Source of the DNA: Sphaerodactylus townsendi
Lineage: Eukaryota
NCBI RefSeq assembly: GCF_021028975.2
Contig: NC_059434.1
Span: 65,162,001-65,226,000, forward strand
Length of the DNA: 64,000 nucleotides
Direction: 5' to 3'
Both the position numbers and the translations under genes were made by a program. Shown one piece after another: positions 2,120-62,808 of the stretch; the stretch's first letter is position 1, and every line of letters starts with the position of its first letter. The notes beneath the pieces are model-generated. The model was not told the DNA's origin and ran no database searches. It saw only the letters and a program-made list of their open reading frames with translations.

Positions 2120-2282
2120 TACCACTGCCAGTATTGTTTACTCTAACTTGTATGGCACTGTAGGATCTCAGGTAGAGGTCTTTCACATCACCTACCATCA
2201 AATGCTTTTTTGGTTGGAAATACCAGAATTGAACGAGGAACCCTCTGCATGCAAATCAGATGCTTTATCACTGGATCCCACT
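2120..2282 (-). mobile_element. tRNA-derived SINE (Squam2-like), degenerate
   Basis: Reverse complement matches the head (CAGTGRTAGAGCATCTG..TGCATGCAGA) and body (GTAGGTGATGTGAAAGACCTCT.CCTGAGA) seen in other copies in this window. Confidence 0.7.
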
Positions 2283-2940
2283 TCATATTTATTAATCCAT
2301 GGAAACTTAGGATATTTGTTATAGGTTTTGAAGGCTTTATGGTGATGATATACAATGGGTATCATCTTTGTTTTCTTACTGTTCCAGAGACCATGTCATA
2401 TTTCACTTGCCTTTGTTATCAGGAAGTGCAATGACTGCTGCTTGCCTGTAACTTTCTCCATGCCTCCCAAGCATGAAAGTATCAATCATGTGTTGCAGTA
2501 TATACTCAAATGCAAGCCTAGTTTTCTTTCAGATATGCCATTAAAATAGGAGCTCACTTTGCAGTTTCCTGCAAGTTACAGTTATGCCCAGTTTTTTCAA
2601 AAAAAAAATCTCGGTCTAGAATTTGTTTTACATGGGTTCAAGATTGCATTCAAGATGGACTTTCTTTTGAGTAAATACAGTAGGTTTTTTTTAGTTTTCT
2701 GAAAGGATGGGGTCAGTCTCTCCTAAGTGACCCTTCCTTCAGTGAGTTTGGTGAAACCACCAGCAGTTCCCAATGAGCATCACTTCCCATAAACTCGACC
2801 TCAATGCATGAATTTCAGAGCTATATACCCCACAATAACCTGAGTCATAGCAGTGCAATGATAACAGACTGTTAATGACATTCAAGGTTGTTTTTCTGGG
2901 TCATATCTACTCACAGCTTGTTTGTCAGTTCATGTGCAAT

Positions 2941-5779: not shown

Positions 5780-6275
5780 GGCTGTTTCCACATGGGTGGA
5801 AACCCTAGGGACGGTTAAAACATCATCCCTGGGCGCTGTTCACACAGCAGGCACTGCTGCATCACAGCAGTGCTGTGCTGGGCTTGCCCAAGTGGCGCAA
5901 AGACACCGCTTTTAAACCTCGCTCCTTGAGCAGCGCTCCCTGAGTGGCATCTTCCCACCGGCGTGGTACAAACTGCACCAGCATGAGGCCACCACTTTTG
6001 GCCCCTCCAGTATCTGCGAGGGACTTACCTTGCCTTCCTCTGCAGCTTTGGGCAACTGGAAAGACACGTCCATGCTGCCCTGTGACCCCTGAGGGTCGGA
6101 ACGCACCATGGGTGTGTCTTTCCAGCTTCCTGAGCTGCAGACACCCTGGGTGGCTCAGTGCGAAGCCGCTTCTGCAGACAGCGTCGGCATCGGGACTGGC
6201 TGCATGGGACCATGCGAACGGTCCCAATGCTCCACCGACTTCACAGCCGCTGCCTCTGGCTGTGCGGAAACAGCC
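5780..6275. mobile_element. Non-autonomous DNA transposon (MITE), PIF/Harbinger-like, family A
   Basis: Terminal inverted repeats (TIRs) GGCTGTTTCCAC..GCGGAAACAGCC, GC-rich interior, and a close homolog at 13278-13698. Confidence 0.8.
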
Positions 6276-6690: not shown

Positions 6691-8067
6691 CCTGTATTCT
6701 TGTTTCTTGTAAAGTCTGCAACAGAGGTGCCTATCCTCCCCAGGTTCCATCCTCAAATCCCTAGGGGTTTGGCAATCTGGAACTGGCCACCATACTTCTC
6801 CTCTCTCCACTAGTGGCCCGGAAGGACTGGCAATCCTAAAAAGATAGGAGTTTATTAGTACAACAGTTTTCTTAGACTTTTCCCTATATAATGTGCTGCA
6901 GTTGCAGAGAATAGCTGCATTATTCCCACAGACATTATAGGGTCACCAAGTCCAAGTACGGGTTGTTGTTATCATTCCTTCTGATGGATTATATGCACAA
7001 CATGCTGCCTTTGTTCCATTAAATGTTGGTTGGTTGGTTTTGAAAGAATTCTGACTTTGCAAGCACCTTCCCAAATAAAATCTGACAAATATCCAAGCAG
7101 AAGAAAATCAGGCTGAGTGGAATAGAATATGCAGCTGTCAAAAACAAAACTTGTGGGTACAGTCTATTGAATAAAATGTCTATGGTTTGCAGTCCCTTCA
7201 ATAAAAGAATAATGTGCTCCCTACCGAATGTAGAGCAGACTGAAAATCAAATTAGACTCAATAGCATCAGTATCCTTAGAAGGTGTAGAAGGACATAATA
7301 AGTTTTTCAGACTGCTCGAGCTGAAGAATGCTTCATCTTCATGTCATAAACTACCTTTATGCTATGAAAGAGCTCTTCAGTGAACAGCAAGGAAAAGAAC
7401 ATCAGGAAGACTCTCCCATATAGATGCACATTAAACTCAAGATAGGATGCATATTTTGTCATTTAAATGCAAAGAACAGATTACAGTCTCCAAATCATTT
7501 GTGTTCAGAGATTTCAGCAGGTATACTTACTAGTAAAGGAATATTACTCTACCCTTTGTTCAAGCTGTAAAAAATAAATGTTAATATTTGTCCTTTTTAA
7601 TACCCAGTTTTCTTTAGTGCATCTTTACATTATTCAACTATTGTTAGACTATGTTTTCAAAAATTAATCTGGTTTAAATAAATACTCAAATTAAGGTCCC
7701 ATCACAAGTGTTAATGGGAGAAAAGTCTACCCATATGAATGGAATATTCATATGTTGTCATGGCAACATGGAATTCTACTAAAGCAGAGTATTTTTGTGG
7801 CAGTGATTGTGCTAATTATGTAATAAACAAGCCAGGTCAAATATACATTTAATGAAACAAATTCATGGCTCATAGGATTTAAGTTTTCAGTTTGCATAAT
7901 CATTTCAGTTTGTAGCAACCACACCTTTGCTGCCAGCCAGTGTGGACTTTCAACAATGTTGCCTGGAAACAGGTTGATCACATTCATGGCTAGCCAAAAG
8001 TCCTTCCAGACTGTCTTCAGTTGGCCATTGTCATGTGCAACTTGACTCAGCCCCTGAAAACCATGGA

Positions 8068-8116
8068 ATGGGGTCATATTGCAGTGGTAGAGCATCTGCT
8101 TCACATACAAAAGATC
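8068..8116 (+). mobile_element. Squam2-like SINE 5' head, interrupted by the copia insertion
   Basis: A-box region CAGTGGTAGAGCATCTGCTT..AAAAGATC stops at 8116. The B-box region (GTTCAATC) resumes at about 11380. Confidence 0.8.
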
Positions 8117-8516
8117 TGTTGGTGTAAAAATATGAAATAGTAGAATAAATAATCACAGATGCTGCCTTTAGCTTAAATAAGCCTTACTAAGAAAAATAGA
8201 AGGGAAGAGTAACATGATAAAAACAATAAAACAGTCCTCTCTGAGCAAGATGCTACTTCTACATGTAAGAAAGTGGAACTCCAACTCACTGAGAACAAAA
8301 AAGTTTACAACTTCCTCTCTAGTGCCTATATGTTTGAAAGCATATATTCTGTGGCAATATGTTGATTAACCAGTGACAATCAATGGATCACTTTATTAAT
8401 GCAACCATATAATTACTCAATGCCCCAGTGGATTTATTAATCTAGCTAACGTTTACTAACAAACAGCATCATTAATTTTGTCATGACTGAAGAGCTGACA
8501 CTTGCATATATCAACA
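8117..8516 (-). repeat. Inverted copia LTR (3'-type, preceded by a polypurine tract)
   Basis: Minus strand reads GAGAAGGGG (PPT) then TGTTGATATATGCAAG ... TTTACACCAACA. It aligns along its length with 8525-8910 (roughly 80% identity by eye). Confidence 0.9.
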
Positions 8517-8524
8517 CCCCTTCT

Positions 8525-8910
8525 CAAGTATCAGACACTAAAGTCATGAAGGAGTTAATTATGCTCTTTGTTAGTAAACATTAGCTAGATTAGCATAGCC
8601 AATGGGGCCTTGAGTAACTAGTTACCTGCATTAATGAAGTAATCAATTGATTGTCACTGGCTGATCAATATATTGCCATAGAATATGTGTTTCCAAGTAC
8701 ATAGGCACTTCAGAAGAAGTTATAAACTTTGTTCTCAGTTAATTGAAGTCACACTTTCTCACTATGTAGAAGCAGCATATAGCTCGATGAGGACTGTTTT
8801 ATTGTTTTACCTTTTATTTTTCCCCTGCTATTTTTCTTAGTAAAGTTTATTTAAGCTAACCAGCAGCATCTGTGATTAGTTACTTTGCTATCTTTTAGTT
8901 TACACCAACA
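8525..8910 (+). repeat. Copia 5' LTR lacking its first ~12 nt
   Basis: Starts at CAAGT (LTR position ~13), ends TTTACACCAACA, and is followed after 3 nt by the PBS. Confidence 0.9.
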
Positions 8911-8913
8911 AAA

Positions 8914-8927
8914 GGTTATGGGCCCAG
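8914..8927 (+). promoter_or_regulatory. Primer binding site of the copia (half-tRNA-iMet, Hemivirus) type
   Basis: GGTTATGGGCCCAG directly after the LTR. This is the PBS motif known for Drosophila copia-type elements primed by a cleaved initiator tRNA-Met. Confidence 0.9.
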
Positions 8928-9211
8928 AAACTTTTCTGTGTTCGCTTAGGCAAAGTTAGGCAATTTTTAAAAGGATCTGTTTTTCCTGTGGATGCTAATT
9001 TTGCCTCCTGAACAATTTGGTCTAATGATGCAAGACAACTTCTTCACTAGAGCCCACCCTCCATATGAGACAGAGGGAGAGGAAACTTGCTACAATTCAT
9101 GCCATGGGGAAAGGAAACACAAGCATCCCAAAGGAGGAGTTTTGAACTGTGCACCTGAAGCCAGCAATATGTCGACACTGGCAAGCAGCAGCATACCCCA
9201 ACAGACTGTAA

Positions 9212-9719
9212 GGCCCTTTCCGCAAAAACGCCGTCCCTAGGGAGCTGTTCACATTGGGGGCACTGTTGCATCACAGCAATGCCACCCTCGCTCCCCCCCC
9301 CTGGTGGCACGAAGCCATTGTTTCCCAACCTCGCTCCCTGAGTGAGGTTTTCTGAAAACAACGGCTTCCAAACGCTGCCATGCAAACGGCAGCGGCTGGA
9401 AGGTGCCATGTCCCCCGCACCATCCCTGAAAGCTTACCTTGCCTCCTGGCTTCTGGCTCACTGCAGAGGCCAGGGGACACACACACCCTGGCCTGTGACT
9501 CTAGAGCCATCGTTCCAGCCTGTGGGGGCGTGGCCCTTGGTTTCTGCGACGAGCCGTAGGCCAGGGGATGAGGTAAGCTTTCAGGGATGGTGCAGCCTTT
9601 GCAAAGGCTGCGCCTCTGCCTGCCGCCCTCCCAGGACCGTCCATGCGAATGGTCCCGGGGGGTGCGTCAGCATCTTTTACGCCAACGTACCCCTGCAACA
9701 TTGCGGTGCGTAAAAGGCC
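9212..9719. mobile_element. Harbinger-like MITE nested in the copia leader
   Basis: TIRs GGCCCTTTCCGCA..TGCGTAAAAGGCC with flanks TAA/TAC. Shares internal motifs with the other GC-rich MITEs in the window. Confidence 0.8.
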
Positions 9720-9744
9720 TACGTTAAAGTATTCTTTCTGTCCC

Positions 9745-11325
9745 ATAAGTACCAAGGCTAAACAACAGGACTATTTAATGTGGCAGAACAAAGTTCTGCT
9801 TGGGCCCCTTCCACACATGCAGAATAATGAACTTTCAGTTCACTTTCAATACACTTTGCAGCTGGATTTTACTGTGTAATAGCAAAATCCACTTGCAAAG
9901 AATTGTGAAAGTGGATTGAAAGTGCATTATTCTGCATGTGTGGAAGGGGCTCAGAAATGCAAGAGGTTTTGAACATTATTACAGAAGACCCAGTCAGACC
10001 CCGAGAAATGTTATGACAGCAGATTGCAAAGCATGCTTTTCAATTTTGAGCTCAATTAATGAGGCTAAATGCTCTCTAGTAAATGAATGTAAAGCTGCAA
10101 AAAACTTGTGGCAAAAATTGGAAAAGAAAAACTGTGTAAAGTCTTCTAAACAAACACAGCTTGTGAGGAGGAAACTAAACCTTTAGATTGCATAAAATTG
10201 GAAAGTTGTATGAGCATCTTGATAAATTAATGGAACATGTGAATCTATTTAAGGCATAAATGAGGGAATTAATGCCACAATTTTGATCAGTTTGCCAAGC
10301 TCATATAACAACCAAATTGCTGTTTTAGAAGCAAGGTACGAGGTGGATGTTGACCTTCTTAAAAGATGTGTTTGAAAAGAGACAAGCTAGTGAAATTTCT
10401 GTTGGAATGTCTGTTAAAATTACAGCATATAAGTGAAGGTGCTGTGTGTTACATTTGTCATAAAAAGGGGTTTATTGCAAAAATTTGTAGATGTAAAAAG
10501 GACACAAATTAACAGAAGCAGGAGAATGTGCATGTATCTGAATCAAATCACAGTATAGCTTCCTAAGGCAAATTCTTTGGGGGAAAGCAAGAAGGGAGAT
10601 TGGCTCAGAATTTTGCCTTTATGGTTGGAAGCAAAAGCTCCAGTGGAAAGAATCTGTTGCTTATAGACTCTGGATCTTTTTCTTATGTTTTCCCATGTTT
10701 TTCTCATGTAACAATTATGGGATATATTGATTTTATGGACCTAAAGGAGGCCAAAGGTGTAAACACTCAATTTGAACAGTTTGTCTCAAACAAGAGAGTG
10801 GAACATTGCTTGAGAACAATCAACAATTCAAAGAGGAAACTTGATAGATTTCTGTGTCTGTGTACAGTGACAAAACCTGACTTTTCTCCAACTGCTGGAA
10901 TCTTAAGCAGAAAAATGGATTCACCCAGTCACCATGATTGGAAAGCTGTAAAGAGGCTGGCTAGATACTTTAAACAAACAGCTGGTTTGAAACTAAAGAT
11001 CTCATCCTGTGACAACCCAGAACTGATTGGACACCTGAACTCTTGACTGGGGTGAAGACAAACTGTGGGTATCTGTTCTTCTACGGAGACACCCTGATCA
11101 GCTGGACTAGTACAAAGCAATCACAAGTTGCCCTATCAACAACTGAGACAATACATCTCTGCTGCAAATGCATGCAGTGAGCTTAAGTGGTTTGTACAAC
11201 TACTAATGGACTTTGGCATAGATGAACCTAAGTCAATAACATTGTTTGAAGACAACCAGTCATGAACTGCTTTATTAAAGAGTGAAAGCATTCAATCAAA
11301 AAGCAAGCATATTGTTGTAAAGTAT
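9745..11325 (+). pseudogene. Copia gag-pol remnant (frameshifted; integrase and most of RT deleted)
   Basis: Gag N-terminus VPRLNN/DYLMW; gag motifs KAAKNLWQKLE and ATILISLPSSY; zinc knuckle CYICHKKGFIAKIC (~10448); protease LLIDSGS; RT end TKPDFSPTAGILSRKMDSPSHHDWKAVKRLARY; RNase H ISWTSTKQSQVALSTTE..LFEDNQS..KSKHIVVKY. Confidence 0.9.
9802..9952. mobile_element. Small palindromic Harbinger-like MITE nested in copia gag
   Basis: GGGCCCCTTCCACACATGCAGAATAATG ... CATTATTCTGCATGTGTGGAAGGGGCTC. It interrupts gag between WQNKVLL and LRNARG. Confidence 0.85.
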
Positions 11326-11379
11326 TCCTCTGTGATTATTTACTCTGCTAACTATTTTATATTTTTACACTGCAAGAAT

Positions 11380-11605
11380 CAAAGTTCAATCACTGGCATC
11401 TCAAGTTAAAAGAACTAATAAGAGGTGATGTGAAAGTCAGATTTAGACCCTGGACAACCAGTGCCAGATGTCAGATTAAGCAAAACTAACCTGGATTGAA
11501 CCTCTGCCTGAGCCCCTGGAGTGCCATTGCCAGTTTGAGTAGACAGTCATGACATTGATGGACCAATAGTCTGATTCAGTATAAGGCAGCTTCATGTGTT
11601 CATGT
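11380..11605 (+). mobile_element. Squam2-like SINE remainder (3' part, with an internal duplication)
   Basis: GTTCAATCACTGGCATCTC..GGTGATGTGAAAG..GTCTGATTCAGTATAAGGCAGCTTCATGTGTTC. It continues the head at 8068-8116. Confidence 0.8.
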
Positions 11606-13277: not shown

Positions 13278-13698
13278 GGCTGTTTCCACATGGGCGGAAA
13301 ACAGAGCCCTAGGGATGGTTAAAACACCGTCCCTGGAGCGCGGTTCGCAAAGCAGGTGCTGGGCCCACAGAAGTAGTATAAAGACGCCACTTTTGGCCCC
13401 TCCAGTATCTGCGAGGGACTTACCTTGCCTTCCTCTGCAGCTCTGGGTAGCTGGAAAGACACGCCTGCACTGCCCTGTGACCCCTGAGGGTCGGAGGTCA
13501 CCGTGGGTGTGTCTTTCCAGCTGCCCAGAGCTGCAGAATAAGACAATGTAAGTCCAATGCAGACACCCTGGGCGGCTCAGTGCGGAGCGCCCCTGCGGGT
13601 AGTGGCATCGGGACTGCCTGCATGGGGCCATGCGACCGGTCCCGATGCTCCATTTATGCTCATGGGAAACCGCTGCCTCTGGCTGTGTGGAAACAGCC
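13278..13698. mobile_element. Harbinger-like MITE, family A (second copy, internally deleted)
   Basis: TIRs GGCTGTTTCCACA/TGTGGAAACAGCC. Long near-identical blocks shared with 5780-6275. Confidence 0.85.
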
Positions 13699-14836: not shown

Positions 14837-15302
14837 GGCCATTTCCACACAGCCAGCTGAGCGGGGGTGCATTGGCATAATTTATGGATGGCATAGTTCA
14901 CATGGACGGTCCTACTGGGTGCACAACCAACGACGCAGCCTTCGCACAGGCTGCACCATCCCCAAACAGCTTTTACCTTCTCCTGGCTTCCATCGTGTTG
15001 TGAAGGCCAGGGGACATGCCCCCATGGCCAGAGCAACGGCTCTGGAGTCAGAGGCCAGGAGGCATGTTCCCTAGCCTCCACAATGCGACAGAAGCCAGGA
15101 GAAGATAAGAGCCATTTGAAGAAGGGGGGGGCGCTGCCTTCCACCTGCTGCTGTTCGCACAGCAGCGGGTGGAAGACGCCACTTTTGGAAAACCTCAGTC
15201 ATTGAGCGAGGTTCAAAAGCAGCGTTTTCGCGCCACGACTGCCACAAGCATGGTGTTTTTACCATCCCTGGGGCACTGTTATTGGGCTGTGTGGAAACAG
15301 CC
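14837..15302. mobile_element. Harbinger-like MITE, family B
   Basis: Ends GGCCATTTCCACACAGCC / GGCTGTGTGGAAACAGCC. Homolog at 56167-56582. Confidence 0.85.
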
Positions 15303-15909: not shown

Positions 15910-16112
15910 TATGAAGGTGCCTTATATGGGCTGGGGGCATTGGTACATAATGTTTGGTATTCTCTGTTCTGATTGGCAGTAGCAGCTCTCCAAGTTCTCA
16001 GGCAAAGACACATCATTCTTTTGAGATCTTTTTAAACAGAGATGCCAGGGACTGAACTCACAGATTTCTGCTTTGAAAATATACACTATTCAAACAAGTC
16101 AAATCCCCTTCC
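15910..16112 (-). mobile_element. Squam2-like SINE, degenerate
   Basis: TGAAGGTGCCTTATA..GGCAGTAGCAGCTCTCCA..AGAGATGCCAGGGACTGAAC is the reverse complement of the family body. Confidence 0.6.
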
Positions 16113-16377
16113 CTAATATGATCACCACATATTTTGTCTTCAAAATTAAGAAGGGCAATAATTGCTCATTTAATCTAGTTAATAAGACCACATGACGTAT
16201 GCTATCACTGCTAGAATCAAAAAGGTTTGCCCAATGAATACTAACATGCTGGGTTGATAGTGAGAATAGATGATAGTCACAGATGGAACTCCTTCAACCC
16301 CTTATGCTTCCTCCCCCATTGTTCCCAGACAGATACGTAATGTCACTGATAAAACAGGTGGCCAGAAACTTAATCCA

Positions 16378-56166: not shown

Positions 56167-56582
56167 GGCCATTTCTGCACAGCCAGCTGACAGTCCCACT
56201 GGGTGCAGAGGCGACGGTGCAACTTTCACACAGGCTGTGCTGTCCCCAAACAGCTCTTACCTCCTCCTGGCTTCCGTCGAGTTGTGGAGGCCAGGGGACA
56301 CGCCCCCATGGCCAGAGCAACAGCTCTGAAGTTGGAGGCCAGGAGGCATGTTCCCTGGCCTCCACAATGCGACAGAAGCCAGGAGAAGGTAAGAGACATT
56401 TGGGGAAGGAGGGGAAGAAAACGCCACCTTCCACCCGCTGCCGTTCGCATGGCAGCGGGTGGAAGACGCCACTTTTGGAAAATCTTGCTCGTTGAGCAAG
56501 GTTCAAAAGCAGCATTTTCATGCCACTTGGCCGGTGTTTTTACCGTCCCTGGGGTGCTGTTATTGGGCTGTGTGGAAACAGC
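56167..56582. mobile_element. Harbinger-like MITE, family B (second copy)
   Basis: TAA flank, termini GGCCATTTCTGCACAGCC / GGCTGTGTGGAAACAGC, colinear with 14837-15302. Confidence 0.85.
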
Positions 56583-60200: not shown

Positions 60201-61483
60201 TCAGATCTCTTGTAATCATCACTAAGGGCCAAGATTACAAAGTCTTTTGAGTGGTTTTTTTAAAAAAAACTATCCCACAACACTGCACTTCCCACCACCC
60301 TCTTGCCAGTTGTCAGGCACTGGCAACCCTGCCTGACTCAGTTGTTGGAATGGAGGACTCAGTAGTCCTGGTCCCCTTCAGATGAGGAGTCTGTTCCTGT
60401 GCCTGAGTCTGGCTTGTGTTGGGGTGGGAGGCGGTTCTTACAGAGCCATGCACAAACCATGGGTCTCTATACATGTCACTTGCTACATTGGGAAGCAGTA
60501 GTGTAAATCAGGTTTGCAACACTGGGCTCTTGTCAGTTTGGGGCTTTACTGGCAGTCATGACCTTCTTGCATATCCCTGGTCCACAAGGAATTTATATAT
60601 CATTCAACACACAGGAATTTACTTCTAACCCTGTTCATTTCCATTTTAAAGTTCAGCATACTTTAGTAATGTGGTTGGAATCCTGAAAATTGATCCAAAT
60701 CTTAATAAAAGTGCAGTGAGCTGCAAAACATAAAATAAAATCCTGAAATTTGCAGGACCTTTTGAGTCAAATTCTACCTATAACTTGACACAAGGAAGCA
60801 GGAAATCTATGCCATGTTCTTGGCTTTTATCTCTCCCCCACCCACCCACCCCATAGTAGCTTCCCTCTGAGACCTTGTGCAAGCTGTTAATACTCCTTAT
60901 TCCTTTGCAGCCCATCTGTTAAGGGGGAATAATAATAATCCCTTTTTCTCATGCGGTATGTTCTTTCACAGGGAAAATATATTACTGTGCAGCAGGTTAT
61001 GCATTGGTCTTTGACAAAGTGACTACATTATTGGAAGTACTTCTGAATGCAGATCTTGTATGTAAACCTGTCATTCAGCACAAAATATATGCATTTCTAT
61101 TCATGCAATAATATTAGTGTTAAAGACTCCGCACAAACAAAGCCAAGGTGTATATGCTTATTCCTGCAAAAGGGGGCCATGTGAAATATTGGCATTCAGT
61201 TCCAGGATTACATCCCATTATTTTAAGGCTTTACAATTTATTATTATATGAGAAAGTAAATAATCACAGGAGAACACTGAGGGAAGACTGGGAAGAACAT
61301 CACTGTTAGCTGTTATGTCTGAAATAAGCATTTGTTTTTCCCTCCTGTTACCTGGTGTAACGCTTGTGTATGACCAAATGCAAAACAAATGACTCAGCCT
61401 TTGGTTCATGCCATGTCACCTGGGAATCCACAGAATCCAGCACTTGCCCAAGATACAGCTGGCTATTTTGTTTACTTGAAAAT

Positions 61484-61777: not shown

Positions 61778-61842
61778 AAATTATAATGTTATGTTGTTGT
61801 GAGGAACTTTGGTTTCTTTGGAAAGAAATGCAGGGAATAGGA

Positions 61843-62500
61843 GAGGGGCTGTGGCTCAGTTGGTGAGCATCTGCTTGGTATGCAGAAGGTCCTAAGCTCA
61901 GTCTCCAGTTGAAAGGACTAGGGAAAAGGTTGTGATGGAATAGTGCTGTAAAAGCTAGCAGCGTCACACCTACATGTTAAAATGGTCTTTGATTTGCCAG
62001 ATGGAAAAACCAAAAATCCATGGAAATTTACCCAGGACAGGAAGATGCCCAAATGAGGCACTTCAAACGCTTTGGGTAACTGCATGGCAAGGAGGGAAGT
62101 TTTCTTGGAAGGTAAAGAACAAAGACCTAGGTGGCTCTATCATGGGAAAAGCTAATATGAGCACCTCTTAGCAGGAAGGTCCCAATGGAACCGTAAGAAT
62201 GTATTCAGCTGAGAAATCTCTGTAACTGCATTTTTGTTTTATTTGTTTCATTTCTGTTTTCCAATAAATCTTTGAGAATTCAGCTGGTCTAGAGTCATTG
62301 GAGGGAAAAGGACCCGGGATTGGGGTGAGATAGCGTGGCTCTCCCAAGCTTGATCTCAGCCTCAATCATCATATATAGGGAGGATATATAGGGAGGACCT
62401 CAACCTTAGATTCTGGAGAGCTGCTTCCAATCAAAGTAGACAGTACTGACCTTGATTGCCCAATGGTCTCATTCAGCATAAGGCAGAATCATGTGTTCCT
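61843..62500 (+). mobile_element. Squam2-like SINE split by a probable solo LTR (61931-62373)
   Basis: Head GGGGCTGTGGCTCAGTTGGTGAGCATCTGC runs to 61930 and the body resumes at about 62391. The insert starts TGTGATG, ends CATCATA, and has AATAAA at 62263. Confidence 0.65.
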
Positions 62501-62808
62501 GTGTAATTAAGTTTATATTCCCAAATATGTAATTCTGTTTTGGAGCCCACTGATGTAAATACTATCGGTCATAATTGTTTAAGGGAAGTGGCAATTCCTC
62601 TTCCAGTTCTCCATCTGATCTCACACCTGAAGTGCCTGATTGTCATGTAACATCTAGTGTGTTCAGTGACACTGCAAATGATGAAAATTAATTATGGTTA
62701 AATTACCGCTTCATGGAAATACAGAGCAAAAATTCCCATTAGTTCACTCTTTTCAGACTAGTCTCTTGATACACACAGATTTTTATCCTATGCCCTACAA
62801 TTTGAGTA

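What the first reader, a model, noticed from the sequence alone, without database searches (positions are those of the whole stretch)
8117..8927. Head-to-head LTR palindrome at a copia terminus, consistent with fold-back-primed reverse transcription
Seen: 8117-8504 and 8525-8910 are inverted ~390-bp copies of one LTR (about 80% identical by eye). The 20-nt loop (8505-8524) contains exactly the LTR start and the PPT on the minus strand (AGAAGGGG|TGTTGATATATG). The forward LTR lacks its first ~12 nt and begins at CAAG, which pairs with CTTG at 8501-8504, and it runs straight into the PBS. Known: plus-strand copia DNA is normally primed by PPT RNA, giving direct LTRs. Inference: nascent minus-strand DNA that had just crossed the PPT folded back via CAAG/CTTG, copied its own LTR and the tRNA primer, then jumped at the PBS to complete the element. 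This accounts for all the junctions in one event.
Basis: partly seen in the sequence, partly recalled or inferred. Interest (0 to 1): 0.85.

Follow-up and report, generated by a model that had tools for sequence, protein, structure and literature searches.

The report
Copia relic with extra inverted LTR
An old, dead copia-type retrotransposon lodged inside a SINE carries an extra, inverted copy of its LTR joined head-to-head to its 5' LTR. The structure is real and a one-off, and the little dating evidence available favours a later DNA copying error over the proposed fold-back during reverse transcription.

Summary
8117-8504 and 8525-8910 are inverted LTR copies, 81.6% identical. The 20-nt spacer holds the first 12 nt of the LTR plus the polypurine tract (PPT) on the minus strand. 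The forward LTR lacks those 12 nt and runs into a primer-binding site (PBS) complementary to the anticodon arm of initiator tRNA-Met.

New here: the whole block 8117-11370 sits inside one tRNA-derived SINE. A short piece of that SINE is duplicated on both sides, so the outer ends belong to one insertion. This argues against two independent insertions.

Over the 41 comparable bases, the LTR stub at 11329-11370 differs from the inverted arm at 2 sites. The forward arm differs from them at 6 and 8 sites (p about 0.01-0.06).

That pattern fits a later event. A nascent DNA strand switched template to the element's own 3' LTR at the shared TGTTG/CAACA end, copied LTR plus PPT backwards, and returned at CAAG. 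I put this at about 0.4. An aberrant cDNA made by fold-back or template switching stays a live rival at about 0.3.

Another first-stage note covers this same stretch.

The parts
8050..8116 (+). Left half of the tRNA-derived SINE that was the insertion target. Its last bases are one copy of the target duplication: 8112-8116 AGATC, or 8106-8116 on the longer reading.
   Evidence: It aligns with uninterrupted SINE copies in the window and stops where they continue into the B-box region. One uninterrupted copy scores as tRNA in Rfam, 32.6 bits against a gathering score of 29.
8117..8516 (-). Complete 400-nt LTR in inverted orientation. On the minus strand it runs TGTTGATATATG...CACCAACA, and its U5 terminus abuts the SINE.
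8517..8524 (-). PPT (AGAAGGGG on the minus strand), attached to the inverted LTR. Together with LTR bases 1-12 it forms the 20-nt spacer of the palindrome.
   Evidence: Sequence read directly; loop of the predicted hairpin.
8525..8910 (+). Forward 5' LTR lacking its first 12 nt. It starts CAAGT and ends CAACA.
   Evidence: Alignment with the inverted arm: 314/385 identical.
8914..8927 (+). PBS, 14 nt, complementary to the anticodon stem-loop of initiator tRNA-Met (the half-tRNA type of Drosophila copia). A 3-nt AAA spacer precedes it at 8911-8913.
   Evidence: Reverse complement of CTGGGCCCATAACC in the tRNA sequence printed in PMC8216282. Use of a half-tRNA by copia is stated in PMC5371799.
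8928..9959 (+). Leader of the element, interrupted by later repeats: a GC-rich palindromic repeat family at about 9225-9720 and a hairpin MITE-like unit at 9801-9953.
   Evidence: Repeat pairs I3, I5, I6 and I8; BLAST hits to 14897-15236, 56256-56503 and 5817-5873.
9960..11328 (+). Decayed coding remnant with stops and frameshifts: copia-type gag, a degenerate zinc knuckle, a protease DSG motif, then a jump to the RNase H end of pol. Integrase and reverse transcriptase are deleted.
   Evidence: Pfam Retrotran_gag_2 hits on two collinear pieces, E = 7.8e-5 and 0.02, both below the gathering score. Frame translations. The RNase H and protease motifs were recognised from knowledge of copia pol, not by a tool hit.
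11329..11370 (+). Last 42 nt of the 3' LTR, forward orientation. The rest of that LTR, its PPT and the end of pol are deleted, and the final CAACA is missing.
   Evidence: A 21-nt pattern match with 0 expected by chance. BLAST to the inverted arm at 85.7% over 42 nt, E = 8e-8, with no hit to the forward arm at the 1e-3 E-value cut-off used. Three-way alignment.
11371..11380 (+). Second copy of the duplicated SINE target (TGCAAGAATC). The SINE then continues from 11381 to about 11690.
   Evidence: Uninterrupted SINE copies carry this segment once, immediately before the B-box region.

Best explanation
A normal copia element inserted long ago into a tRNA-derived SINE. Later, when its two LTRs had already drifted apart, a DNA copying error added the inverted LTR. 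The error could have come from replication or from break repair.

The proposed steps are these. A nascent top strand had copied the first five bases of the 5' LTR (TGTTG). It then switched to the top strand of the element's own 3' LTR, pairing with its terminal CAACA. It copied that LTR backwards and went on through the PPT. It returned to the 5' LTR at base 13 through the CAAG/CTTG match. The net change is a 408-nt inverted templated insertion replacing LTR bases 6-12. The 3' LTR was afterwards, or in the same event, reduced to its last 42 nt.

Shown: the anatomy, the single target duplication, the TGTTG identity of the two LTR ends, and the closer likeness of the inverted arm to the 3' stub. 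Inferred: the template switch itself, its timing, and CTTG upstream of the original PPT.
For: 1. One duplication of the SINE target flanks the whole block, so the outer ends belong to one original insertion.
2. The left junction lies exactly where the 5' LTR start and the reverse complement of the LTR end are identical (TGTTG). A 5-nt microhomology therefore explains the 'precise' terminus.
3. Leaving and return points in the 5' LTR are 8 nt apart (bases 5 and 13). CAAG/CTTG sits at the return.
4. Timing over 41 shared bases: inverted arm vs stub 2 substitutions, forward arm vs stub 6, forward vs inverted 8. The arms overall differ by 18.4%. This is the tree ((inverted, stub), forward) that a late copy of the 3' LTR predicts. 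Binomial p is about 0.012 under equal ages.
5. The differences between the arms are spread evenly and symmetric in type, as expected from ordinary drift.
6. On this reading the palindrome was born with arms already about 12% apart. Perfect inverted repeats with spacers under about 35-52 bp are fragile, and divergence stabilises them (PMC8701086; PMC10164571 abstract).
Against: The dating rests on 41 bases and was noticed after the fact. Allowing for the choice among three pairs, p is about 0.04-0.06. A templated insertion of about 400 nt from a donor several kb away is a rare kind of event, and I found no published case in an LTR element. The right junction is odd: the LTR lacks its CAACA, and the duplicated target may be 10-11 bp rather than 5. 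This model does not explain that, and it hints that the insertion was aberrant from the start. CTTG upstream of the PPT is unverified.
Confidence: 0.4

Rival explanations
1. Aberrant reverse transcription. A minus-strand DNA end paired at the CAAG/CTTG match with minus-strand DNA and copied LTR sequence in the wrong sense. Either the nascent strand folded back just past the PPT, or the nearly finished strand switched onto its own 5' end 12 nt before the end of the LTR. The result is a three-LTR cDNA with two U5 ends, which was then inserted as a unit.
For: The left terminus is exact and lies next to the target duplication. A PPT is attached to the inverted LTR. One target duplication surrounds the block. 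Template switching and self-priming by reverse transcriptases are well documented in vitro; the papers listed include PMC6088434. The non-canonical right junction (truncated LTR, possibly a 10-11-bp duplication) would suit an insertion that was abnormal from the outset. An untested first-stage note reports another fold-back LTR element elsewhere in this genome.
Against: The observed pattern is inverted close to stub, with forward the outlier (p about 0.01-0.06). The early fold-back version needs a second complete minus-strand DNA as acceptor. A perfect 388-bp palindrome with a 20-nt spacer would have had to survive in the germ line.
Confidence: 0.3
2. Two cDNA molecules or fragments of the family were joined end to end by host end-joining at a 4-nt microhomology, before or during capture at a break in the SINE.
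For: The right junction looks microhomology-mediated. The LTR tail (TTTACAC) overlaps the SINE's TTCACA, the CAACA is lost, and about 10-11 bp of target are duplicated.
Against: Both inner breakpoints fall within 20 nt of the same LTR start, which is a coincidence for independent fragments. Like the previous rival, it predicts equal ages for all three LTRs.
Confidence: 0.1
3. Two independent insertions of the family in opposite orientation, nested or adjacent, followed by deletions that removed most of one of them and 12 nt of the other.
For: The locus has clearly lost much DNA: integrase, reverse transcriptase, the end of pol and most of the 3' LTR. The arms differ by 18%.
Against: The SINE target duplication pairs the inverted LTR's terminus with a forward LTR tail, not with the other end of a reverse element. 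No remnant of a reverse element follows 11370. No other copy of this LTR lies in the 64 kb, so a second hit within 20 bp by chance is very unlikely. The stub should resemble its supposed partner, the forward arm, but resembles the inverted arm.
Confidence: 0.07
4. Assembly or sequencing artefact (chimeric palindromic reads).
For: None specific.
Against: Artefactual palindromes have near-identical arms, and these differ by 18% with indels. Contigs from 5 runs in 2 studies hold up to 92% of the sampled words of the stretch.
Confidence: 0.02

Closest known systems
Drosophila copia and Ty1/copia (Pseudoviridae) LTR retrotransposons
   Same: Copia-type gag. LTRs ending TGTTG...CAACA. A PPT directly before the LTR. 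A PBS complementary to the anticodon arm of initiator tRNA-Met, the 'half-tRNA' priming known for Drosophila copia.
   Different: A third LTR in inverted orientation, joined head-to-head to a 5' LTR that lacks 12 nt. Integrase and reverse transcriptase are deleted, and the copy is dead and old.
Replicative template-switch, microhomology-mediated rearrangements (FoSTeS/MMBIR, short template-switch mutations, inverted templated insertions)
   Same: An inverted copy of nearby sequence inserted between two closely spaced points, with 4-5 nt microhomology at the junctions. Template switching as a source of small inversions is discussed in PMC8755829, and of inverted copy-number variants in PMC10766186 (abstracts only read).
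   Different: Here the donor is the other LTR of the same element, several kb away, and the copied stretch is about 408 nt. Both figures are larger than in typical short template switches. FoSTeS and MMBIR are named from my own knowledge.
Self-priming of retroviral minus-strand DNA (HIV-1 strong-stop DNA fold-back, suppressed by nucleocapsid)
   Same: A minus-strand 3' end folds back on itself and is extended.
   Different: It is known mainly as an in vitro dead-end reaction at the TAR hairpin. It has not been described as a route to an inserted three-LTR element. The dating evidence here does not favour it.
DIRS-like retrotransposons with inverted terminal repeats
   Same: A retroelement bounded by inverted copies of its terminal repeat (PMC5633606 appeared; I did not read it).
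   Different: In DIRS elements the inverted repeats are a family-wide design that goes with a tyrosine recombinase. Here the element has a PBS, a PPT, a copia gag and a target duplication, and the inverted LTR lies outside the transcribed unit, so it cannot be inherited by progeny copies.

Membership tests
Ty1/copia LTR retrotransposon | Copia-type gag | tested here: met
   Pfam Retrotran_gag_2 on two collinear pieces (profile 28-88 and 126-154), E = 7.8e-5 and 0.02. Both are below the gathering score, as expected for a decayed copy.
Ty1/copia LTR retrotransposon | Pol order protease - integrase - reverse transcriptase - RNase H | tested here: inconclusive
   A protease-like DSG motif is followed directly by RNase H-like motifs. 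Integrase and reverse transcriptase are deleted, and there were no Pfam hits on the short pieces.
Ty1/copia LTR retrotransposon | LTRs with TG...CA ends, a PPT before the 3' LTR, a tRNA-complementary PBS after the 5' LTR | tested here: met
   TGTTG...CAACA ends, AGAAGGGG next to the LTR start, and a 14-nt match to initiator tRNA-Met.
Ty1/copia LTR retrotransposon | 5-bp target-site duplication | tested here: inconclusive
   AGATC on the left against AGAATC on the right. Taken alone this is not significant (p about 0.13). The SINE alignment shows that a duplication exists, but it may be 10-11 bp with a truncated LTR end.
Fold-back-primed (self-primed) cDNA product | All LTR copies identical at birth, so equally diverged now, with the forward arm a direct copy of the inverted arm | tested here: not met
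   2 substitutions (inverted vs stub) against 6 and 8 in 41 bases. p is about 0.01-0.06, a weak test.
Fold-back-primed (self-primed) cDNA product | CTTG immediately upstream of the PPT in the family | not testable with these tools
   No other copy is in the window. No relatives were reachable. The element's own PPT region is deleted.
Fold-back-primed (self-primed) cDNA product | One target duplication around the whole three-LTR block | tested here: met
   SINE continuity across 8116 and 11371-11381.
Template-switch inverted templated insertion | Microhomology at both junctions | tested here: inconclusive
   TGTTG is shared by the LTR start and the reverse complement of the LTR end, so that junction is met. 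CAAG/CTTG at the return depends on the unknown sequence upstream of the original PPT.
Template-switch inverted templated insertion | The donor lies nearby in cis in the opposite sense, and the copy is younger than the surrounding repeat | tested here: met
   The tail of the 3' LTR survives at 11329-11370 and is the closest relative of the inverted arm. Small sample.
DIRS-like element | Tyrosine recombinase, and inverted repeats as a family design | tested here: not met
   No such coding remnant was found. A copia gag, a PBS and a PPT are present.

The most novel reading that the evidence does not exclude
The block is a fossil of an aberrant reverse-transcription product. A copia minus-strand DNA primed on itself, or switched onto its own 5' end, at a 4-nt match next to the PPT. 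That made a three-LTR cDNA with two U5 ends, which was then inserted into the genome. It would be a natural, inserted example of a reaction known mainly from the test tube.
Probability: 0.3. Interest if true: 0.55.

Novelty: new variant of a known kind. Interest (0 to 1): 0.3.

Why it matters
It is a clean natural example of how an inverted LTR can be added to a retrotransposon through short matches at the LTR ends. The junctions are readable base by base, and there is a built-in clock: three LTR copies and a duplicated target.

If the late template-switch reading holds, it shows that the inverted 5-nt ends of LTRs can guide switching between the two LTRs of one element. It also shows that such palindromes persist when born imperfect. 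If the reverse-transcription reading holds, it documents self-primed cDNA reaching the germ line.

Either way it is a single, dead, old copy with no sign of function or spread, because the inverted LTR lies outside the transcribed unit. The wider significance is therefore modest.

Tried and rejected
The call was counted and the cap is 1, so I got no read or contig evidence on the centre of the palindrome, on other copies or on other species.
3. The search for homologous proteins with the 148-aa ORF gave nothing. Its length filter cannot reach full-length copia polyproteins.
4. An exact look-up of 10 ORFs of the locus found none in the collection.
5. A metagenome scan for a 26-nt block conserved between the arms gave 0 hits.
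6. Treated as a bare 5-mer match, the target duplication is not significant (p about 0.13-0.15). It became convincing only through the SINE alignment.
7. APOBEC-type editing as the cause of the forward arm's extra differences is rejected. The substitution types are symmetric (G>A 11, A>G 10, C>T 9, T>C 11).
8. The LTR-like match at 61249 is chance; no LTR lies there.
9. A simple inversion of part of a normal element is rejected. It would leave the reverse complement of LTR bases 1-12 at the right end, not a forward LTR tail.
10. Autointegration is rejected. It joins intact LTR termini to internal DNA, whereas the central junction here is PPT to LTR base 13.
11. A chromosomal fold-back duplication is rejected. 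The forward arm continues into the PBS, not into inverted flank.
12. The ORF in the left flank (7748-8110, minus strand) has no Pfam family.

Full report
**What is there.** The stretch 8117-8504 and the stretch 8525-8910 are inverted copies of one LTR. The repeat finder reports a chain of collinear inverted pairs across 8127-8901. BLAST joins them into one 392-column match with E = 7e-91. A global alignment gives 314 identical of 385 aligned bases (81.6%), with 41 transitions, 30 transversions and a handful of short indels. As a single DNA strand, 8110-8920 folds into one long hairpin with a 20-nt loop, z = -19 against shuffles.

The loop (8505-8524) read on the minus strand is AGAAGGGG followed by TGTTGATATATG, that is a PPT and LTR bases 1-12. 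The inverted copy is therefore a complete 400-nt LTR (8117-8516) with its PPT, so it comes from a 3'-LTR context. The forward copy begins at LTR base 13 (CAAGT, 8525) and ends CAACA at 8910. After AAA comes GGTTATGGGCCCAG (8914-8927). That is the reverse complement of CTGGGCCCATAACC in the anticodon arm of initiator tRNA-Met as printed in PMC8216282. Priming from a half-tRNA is the known peculiarity of Drosophila copia (PMC5371799).

Downstream lies a leader interrupted by later repeats. Then comes a decayed coding remnant. It holds two collinear pieces of copia-type gag (Pfam Retrotran_gag_2, E = 7.8e-5 and 0.02), a degenerate zinc knuckle and a protease-like DSG motif. It then jumps straight to RNase H-like motifs, so integrase and reverse transcriptase are gone. 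At 11329-11370 sit the last 42 nt of an LTR in forward orientation.

**The insertion site (new).** The left flank up to 8116 and the right flank from 11371 are the two halves of one tRNA-derived SINE. Three uninterrupted copies in the window (2120-2300 minus, 15990-16130 minus, 61830-61960 plus) run straight through the site. One of them scores as tRNA in Rfam above the gathering score.

In those copies the segment matching GCAGAAGGTC occurs once, just before the B-box region. At this locus it occurs twice. The first copy is at the end of the left flank (TACAAAAGATC, 8106-8116). The second is at the start of the right flank (TGCAAGAATC, 11371-11380), followed by AAAGTTCAATC.

A target duplication therefore brackets the whole block 8117-11370. 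It pairs the U5 terminus of the inverted LTR with the tail of a forward LTR. As a bare 5-mer comparison (AGATC against AGAATC) this is not significant (p about 0.13). The weight comes from the SINE register.

The right junction is not canonical. The LTR stops at ...TTTACAC without its final CAACA, and the next four bases (TGCA) match the SINE. So the duplication is probably 10-11 bp, with an overlap between the LTR tail and the SINE's TTCACA. I leave this unexplained.

**What the bracket excludes.** Suppose a forward element had landed inside a reverse one. Then the right end of the block would be the start of a reversed LTR, and reversed internal sequence would follow. Neither is seen. No other copy of this LTR lies in the 64 kb, so two independent hits within 20 bp are very unlikely.

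A chromosomal fold-back duplication is excluded because the forward arm continues into the PBS, not into inverted flank. A simple inversion would leave the reverse complement of LTR bases 1-12 at the right end. Autointegration would join intact LTR termini to internal DNA. An assembly artefact would have identical arms. Contigs from 5 runs in 2 studies also hold up to 92% of the sampled words of the stretch.

Only 41 bases are shared by all three LTR copies:
- inverted arm vs stub: 2 substitutions and one 4-nt indel;
- forward arm vs stub: 6 substitutions and two indels;
- forward arm vs inverted arm: 8 substitutions and one indel, in line with the 18.4% seen over the whole arms.

Of the variable sites, 6-7 are private to the forward arm, 2 to the inverted arm and 0-1 to the stub. 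If all three were equally old, 2 or fewer differences in 41 at a rate of 0.184 has binomial p about 0.012. A three-way split of 6:2:0 has one-sided p about 0.02. Allowing for the free choice of pair gives about 0.04-0.06.

The differences between the arms are evenly spread and symmetric in type, so editing or a local mutation cluster does not explain them. The two copies of the target differ by several edits in 10-11 bases, which suits an old insertion.

The simplest tree is ((inverted arm, 3' stub), forward arm). In any single-cDNA version it predicts a star.

**Best reading.** I read this as a normal element that inserted into the SINE and was rearranged later, after its LTRs had diverged by roughly 12%. 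The start of the LTR and the reverse complement of its end are both TGTTG.

The steps would be as follows. A nascent top strand copied TGTTG of the 5' LTR and then paired with CAACA at the end of the 3' LTR of the same element. It copied that LTR backwards, then the PPT, then (if CTTG preceded the PPT) CAAG. It returned to base 13 of the 5' LTR, where CAAG stands. This reproduces both junctions exactly, including the seemingly integrase-precise left end. It replaces only bases 6-12 and keeps the original target duplication.

It also makes the inverted arm a late copy of the 3' LTR, as the counts suggest. And it gives birth to an imperfect palindrome. That matters because perfect inverted repeats with spacers below about 35-52 bp are fragile in animal cells, and divergence between arms reduces that (PMC8701086; abstract of PMC10164571).

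The loss of most of the 3' LTR may be a separate deletion or part of the same event. A cut, inverted and re-joined segment with a 42-nt overlap would look the same. I hold this reading at about 0.4. The dating rests on 41 bases, the event type is rare at this size and distance, and it does not account for the odd right junction.

**Main rival.** An aberrant cDNA stays plausible at about 0.3. Reverse transcriptases switch templates readily and can self-prime (papers). The odd right junction would suit an insertion that was abnormal from the start.

After fold-back and copying of the LTR and primer, the 3' end is plus-sense PBS. It can only continue on a second, complete minus-strand DNA. A variant needs only one molecule: the nearly complete minus strand, 12 nt short of the end of the 5' LTR copy, switches onto its own 5' region next to the PPT. 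Both variants predict equal ages.

End-joining of two cDNA fragments (about 0.1) and independent insertions plus deletions (about 0.07) are weaker.

**What could not be done.** I sent none of those letters to any later search and masked them in scripts. There is therefore no evidence here on spanning reads, on other genomic copies or on other species.

The homology search, the exact ORF look-ups and a metagenome scan found nothing. So the key microhomology claim, CTTG upstream of the PPT in the family, is untested. The element's own PPT region is deleted. A tabulation of natural copies would answer the question.

**Earlier notes of the scan.** After I had found the SINE bracket, a look-up showed another first-stage note on this same stretch: 'Three-LTR insertion with two U5 ends inside a single SINE'. 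It agrees with the anatomy. Titles only were returned for two further notes on other pieces of this genome. One reports a fold-back LTR element with identical ends. The other reports a complete recent copia. They are leads, not evidence.

**Verdict.** The feature is real and correctly described. It is a one-off rearrangement of an old, dead copia copy. The proposed mechanism is possible, but the one timing test available does not favour it. The case is a curiosity of mechanism rather than a new kind of element.

Noticed in passing
window 11363-11381: Non-canonical right junction. The 3' LTR tail stops at ...TTTACAC without the terminal CAACA and is followed by TGCAAGAATC, a second copy of the SINE segment that ends the left flank. 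The duplication is probably 10-11 bp rather than 5, with an imperfect overlap between the LTR tail and the SINE's TTCACA.
   Followed up: partly
window 9801-9953: A compact hairpin repeat (arms 9801-9873 and 9881-9953, 85% complementary, 7-nt spacer) is nested in the copia leader. It looks like a MITE inserted after the copia element.
   Followed up: no
window 9225-9720; also 5817-6234, 13395-13652, 14897-15236, 56256-56503: A GC-rich repeat family, itself internally palindromic, occurs at least five times in the window. One copy is nested in the copia leader.
   Followed up: no
window 2120-2300 (-), 15990-16130 (-), 61830-61960 (+), 62397-62503: Several old copies (63-78% alike) of the tRNA-derived SINE family that was the insertion target. 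The head at 61845-61906 scores as tRNA in Rfam (32.6 bits, gathering score 29).
   Followed up: partly
window 10660-10830: The internal deletion joins the protease region (LLIDSGS) almost directly to the end of reverse transcriptase/RNase H. Integrase and most of reverse transcriptase are missing. The zinc knuckle at about 10450-10490 has F where the H of CX2CX4HX4C should be.
   Followed up: no
window 11344-11353 vs 8142-8149 and 8883-8890: The stub carries GCTAACTA where the forward arm has GCTA and the inverted arm has ACTA. The two arms may each have lost a different half of a short tandem, or the stub gained one. This affects one site of the three-way count.
   Followed up: partly
Nothing was laid, and I did not send them to any search tool afterwards.
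   Followed up: no
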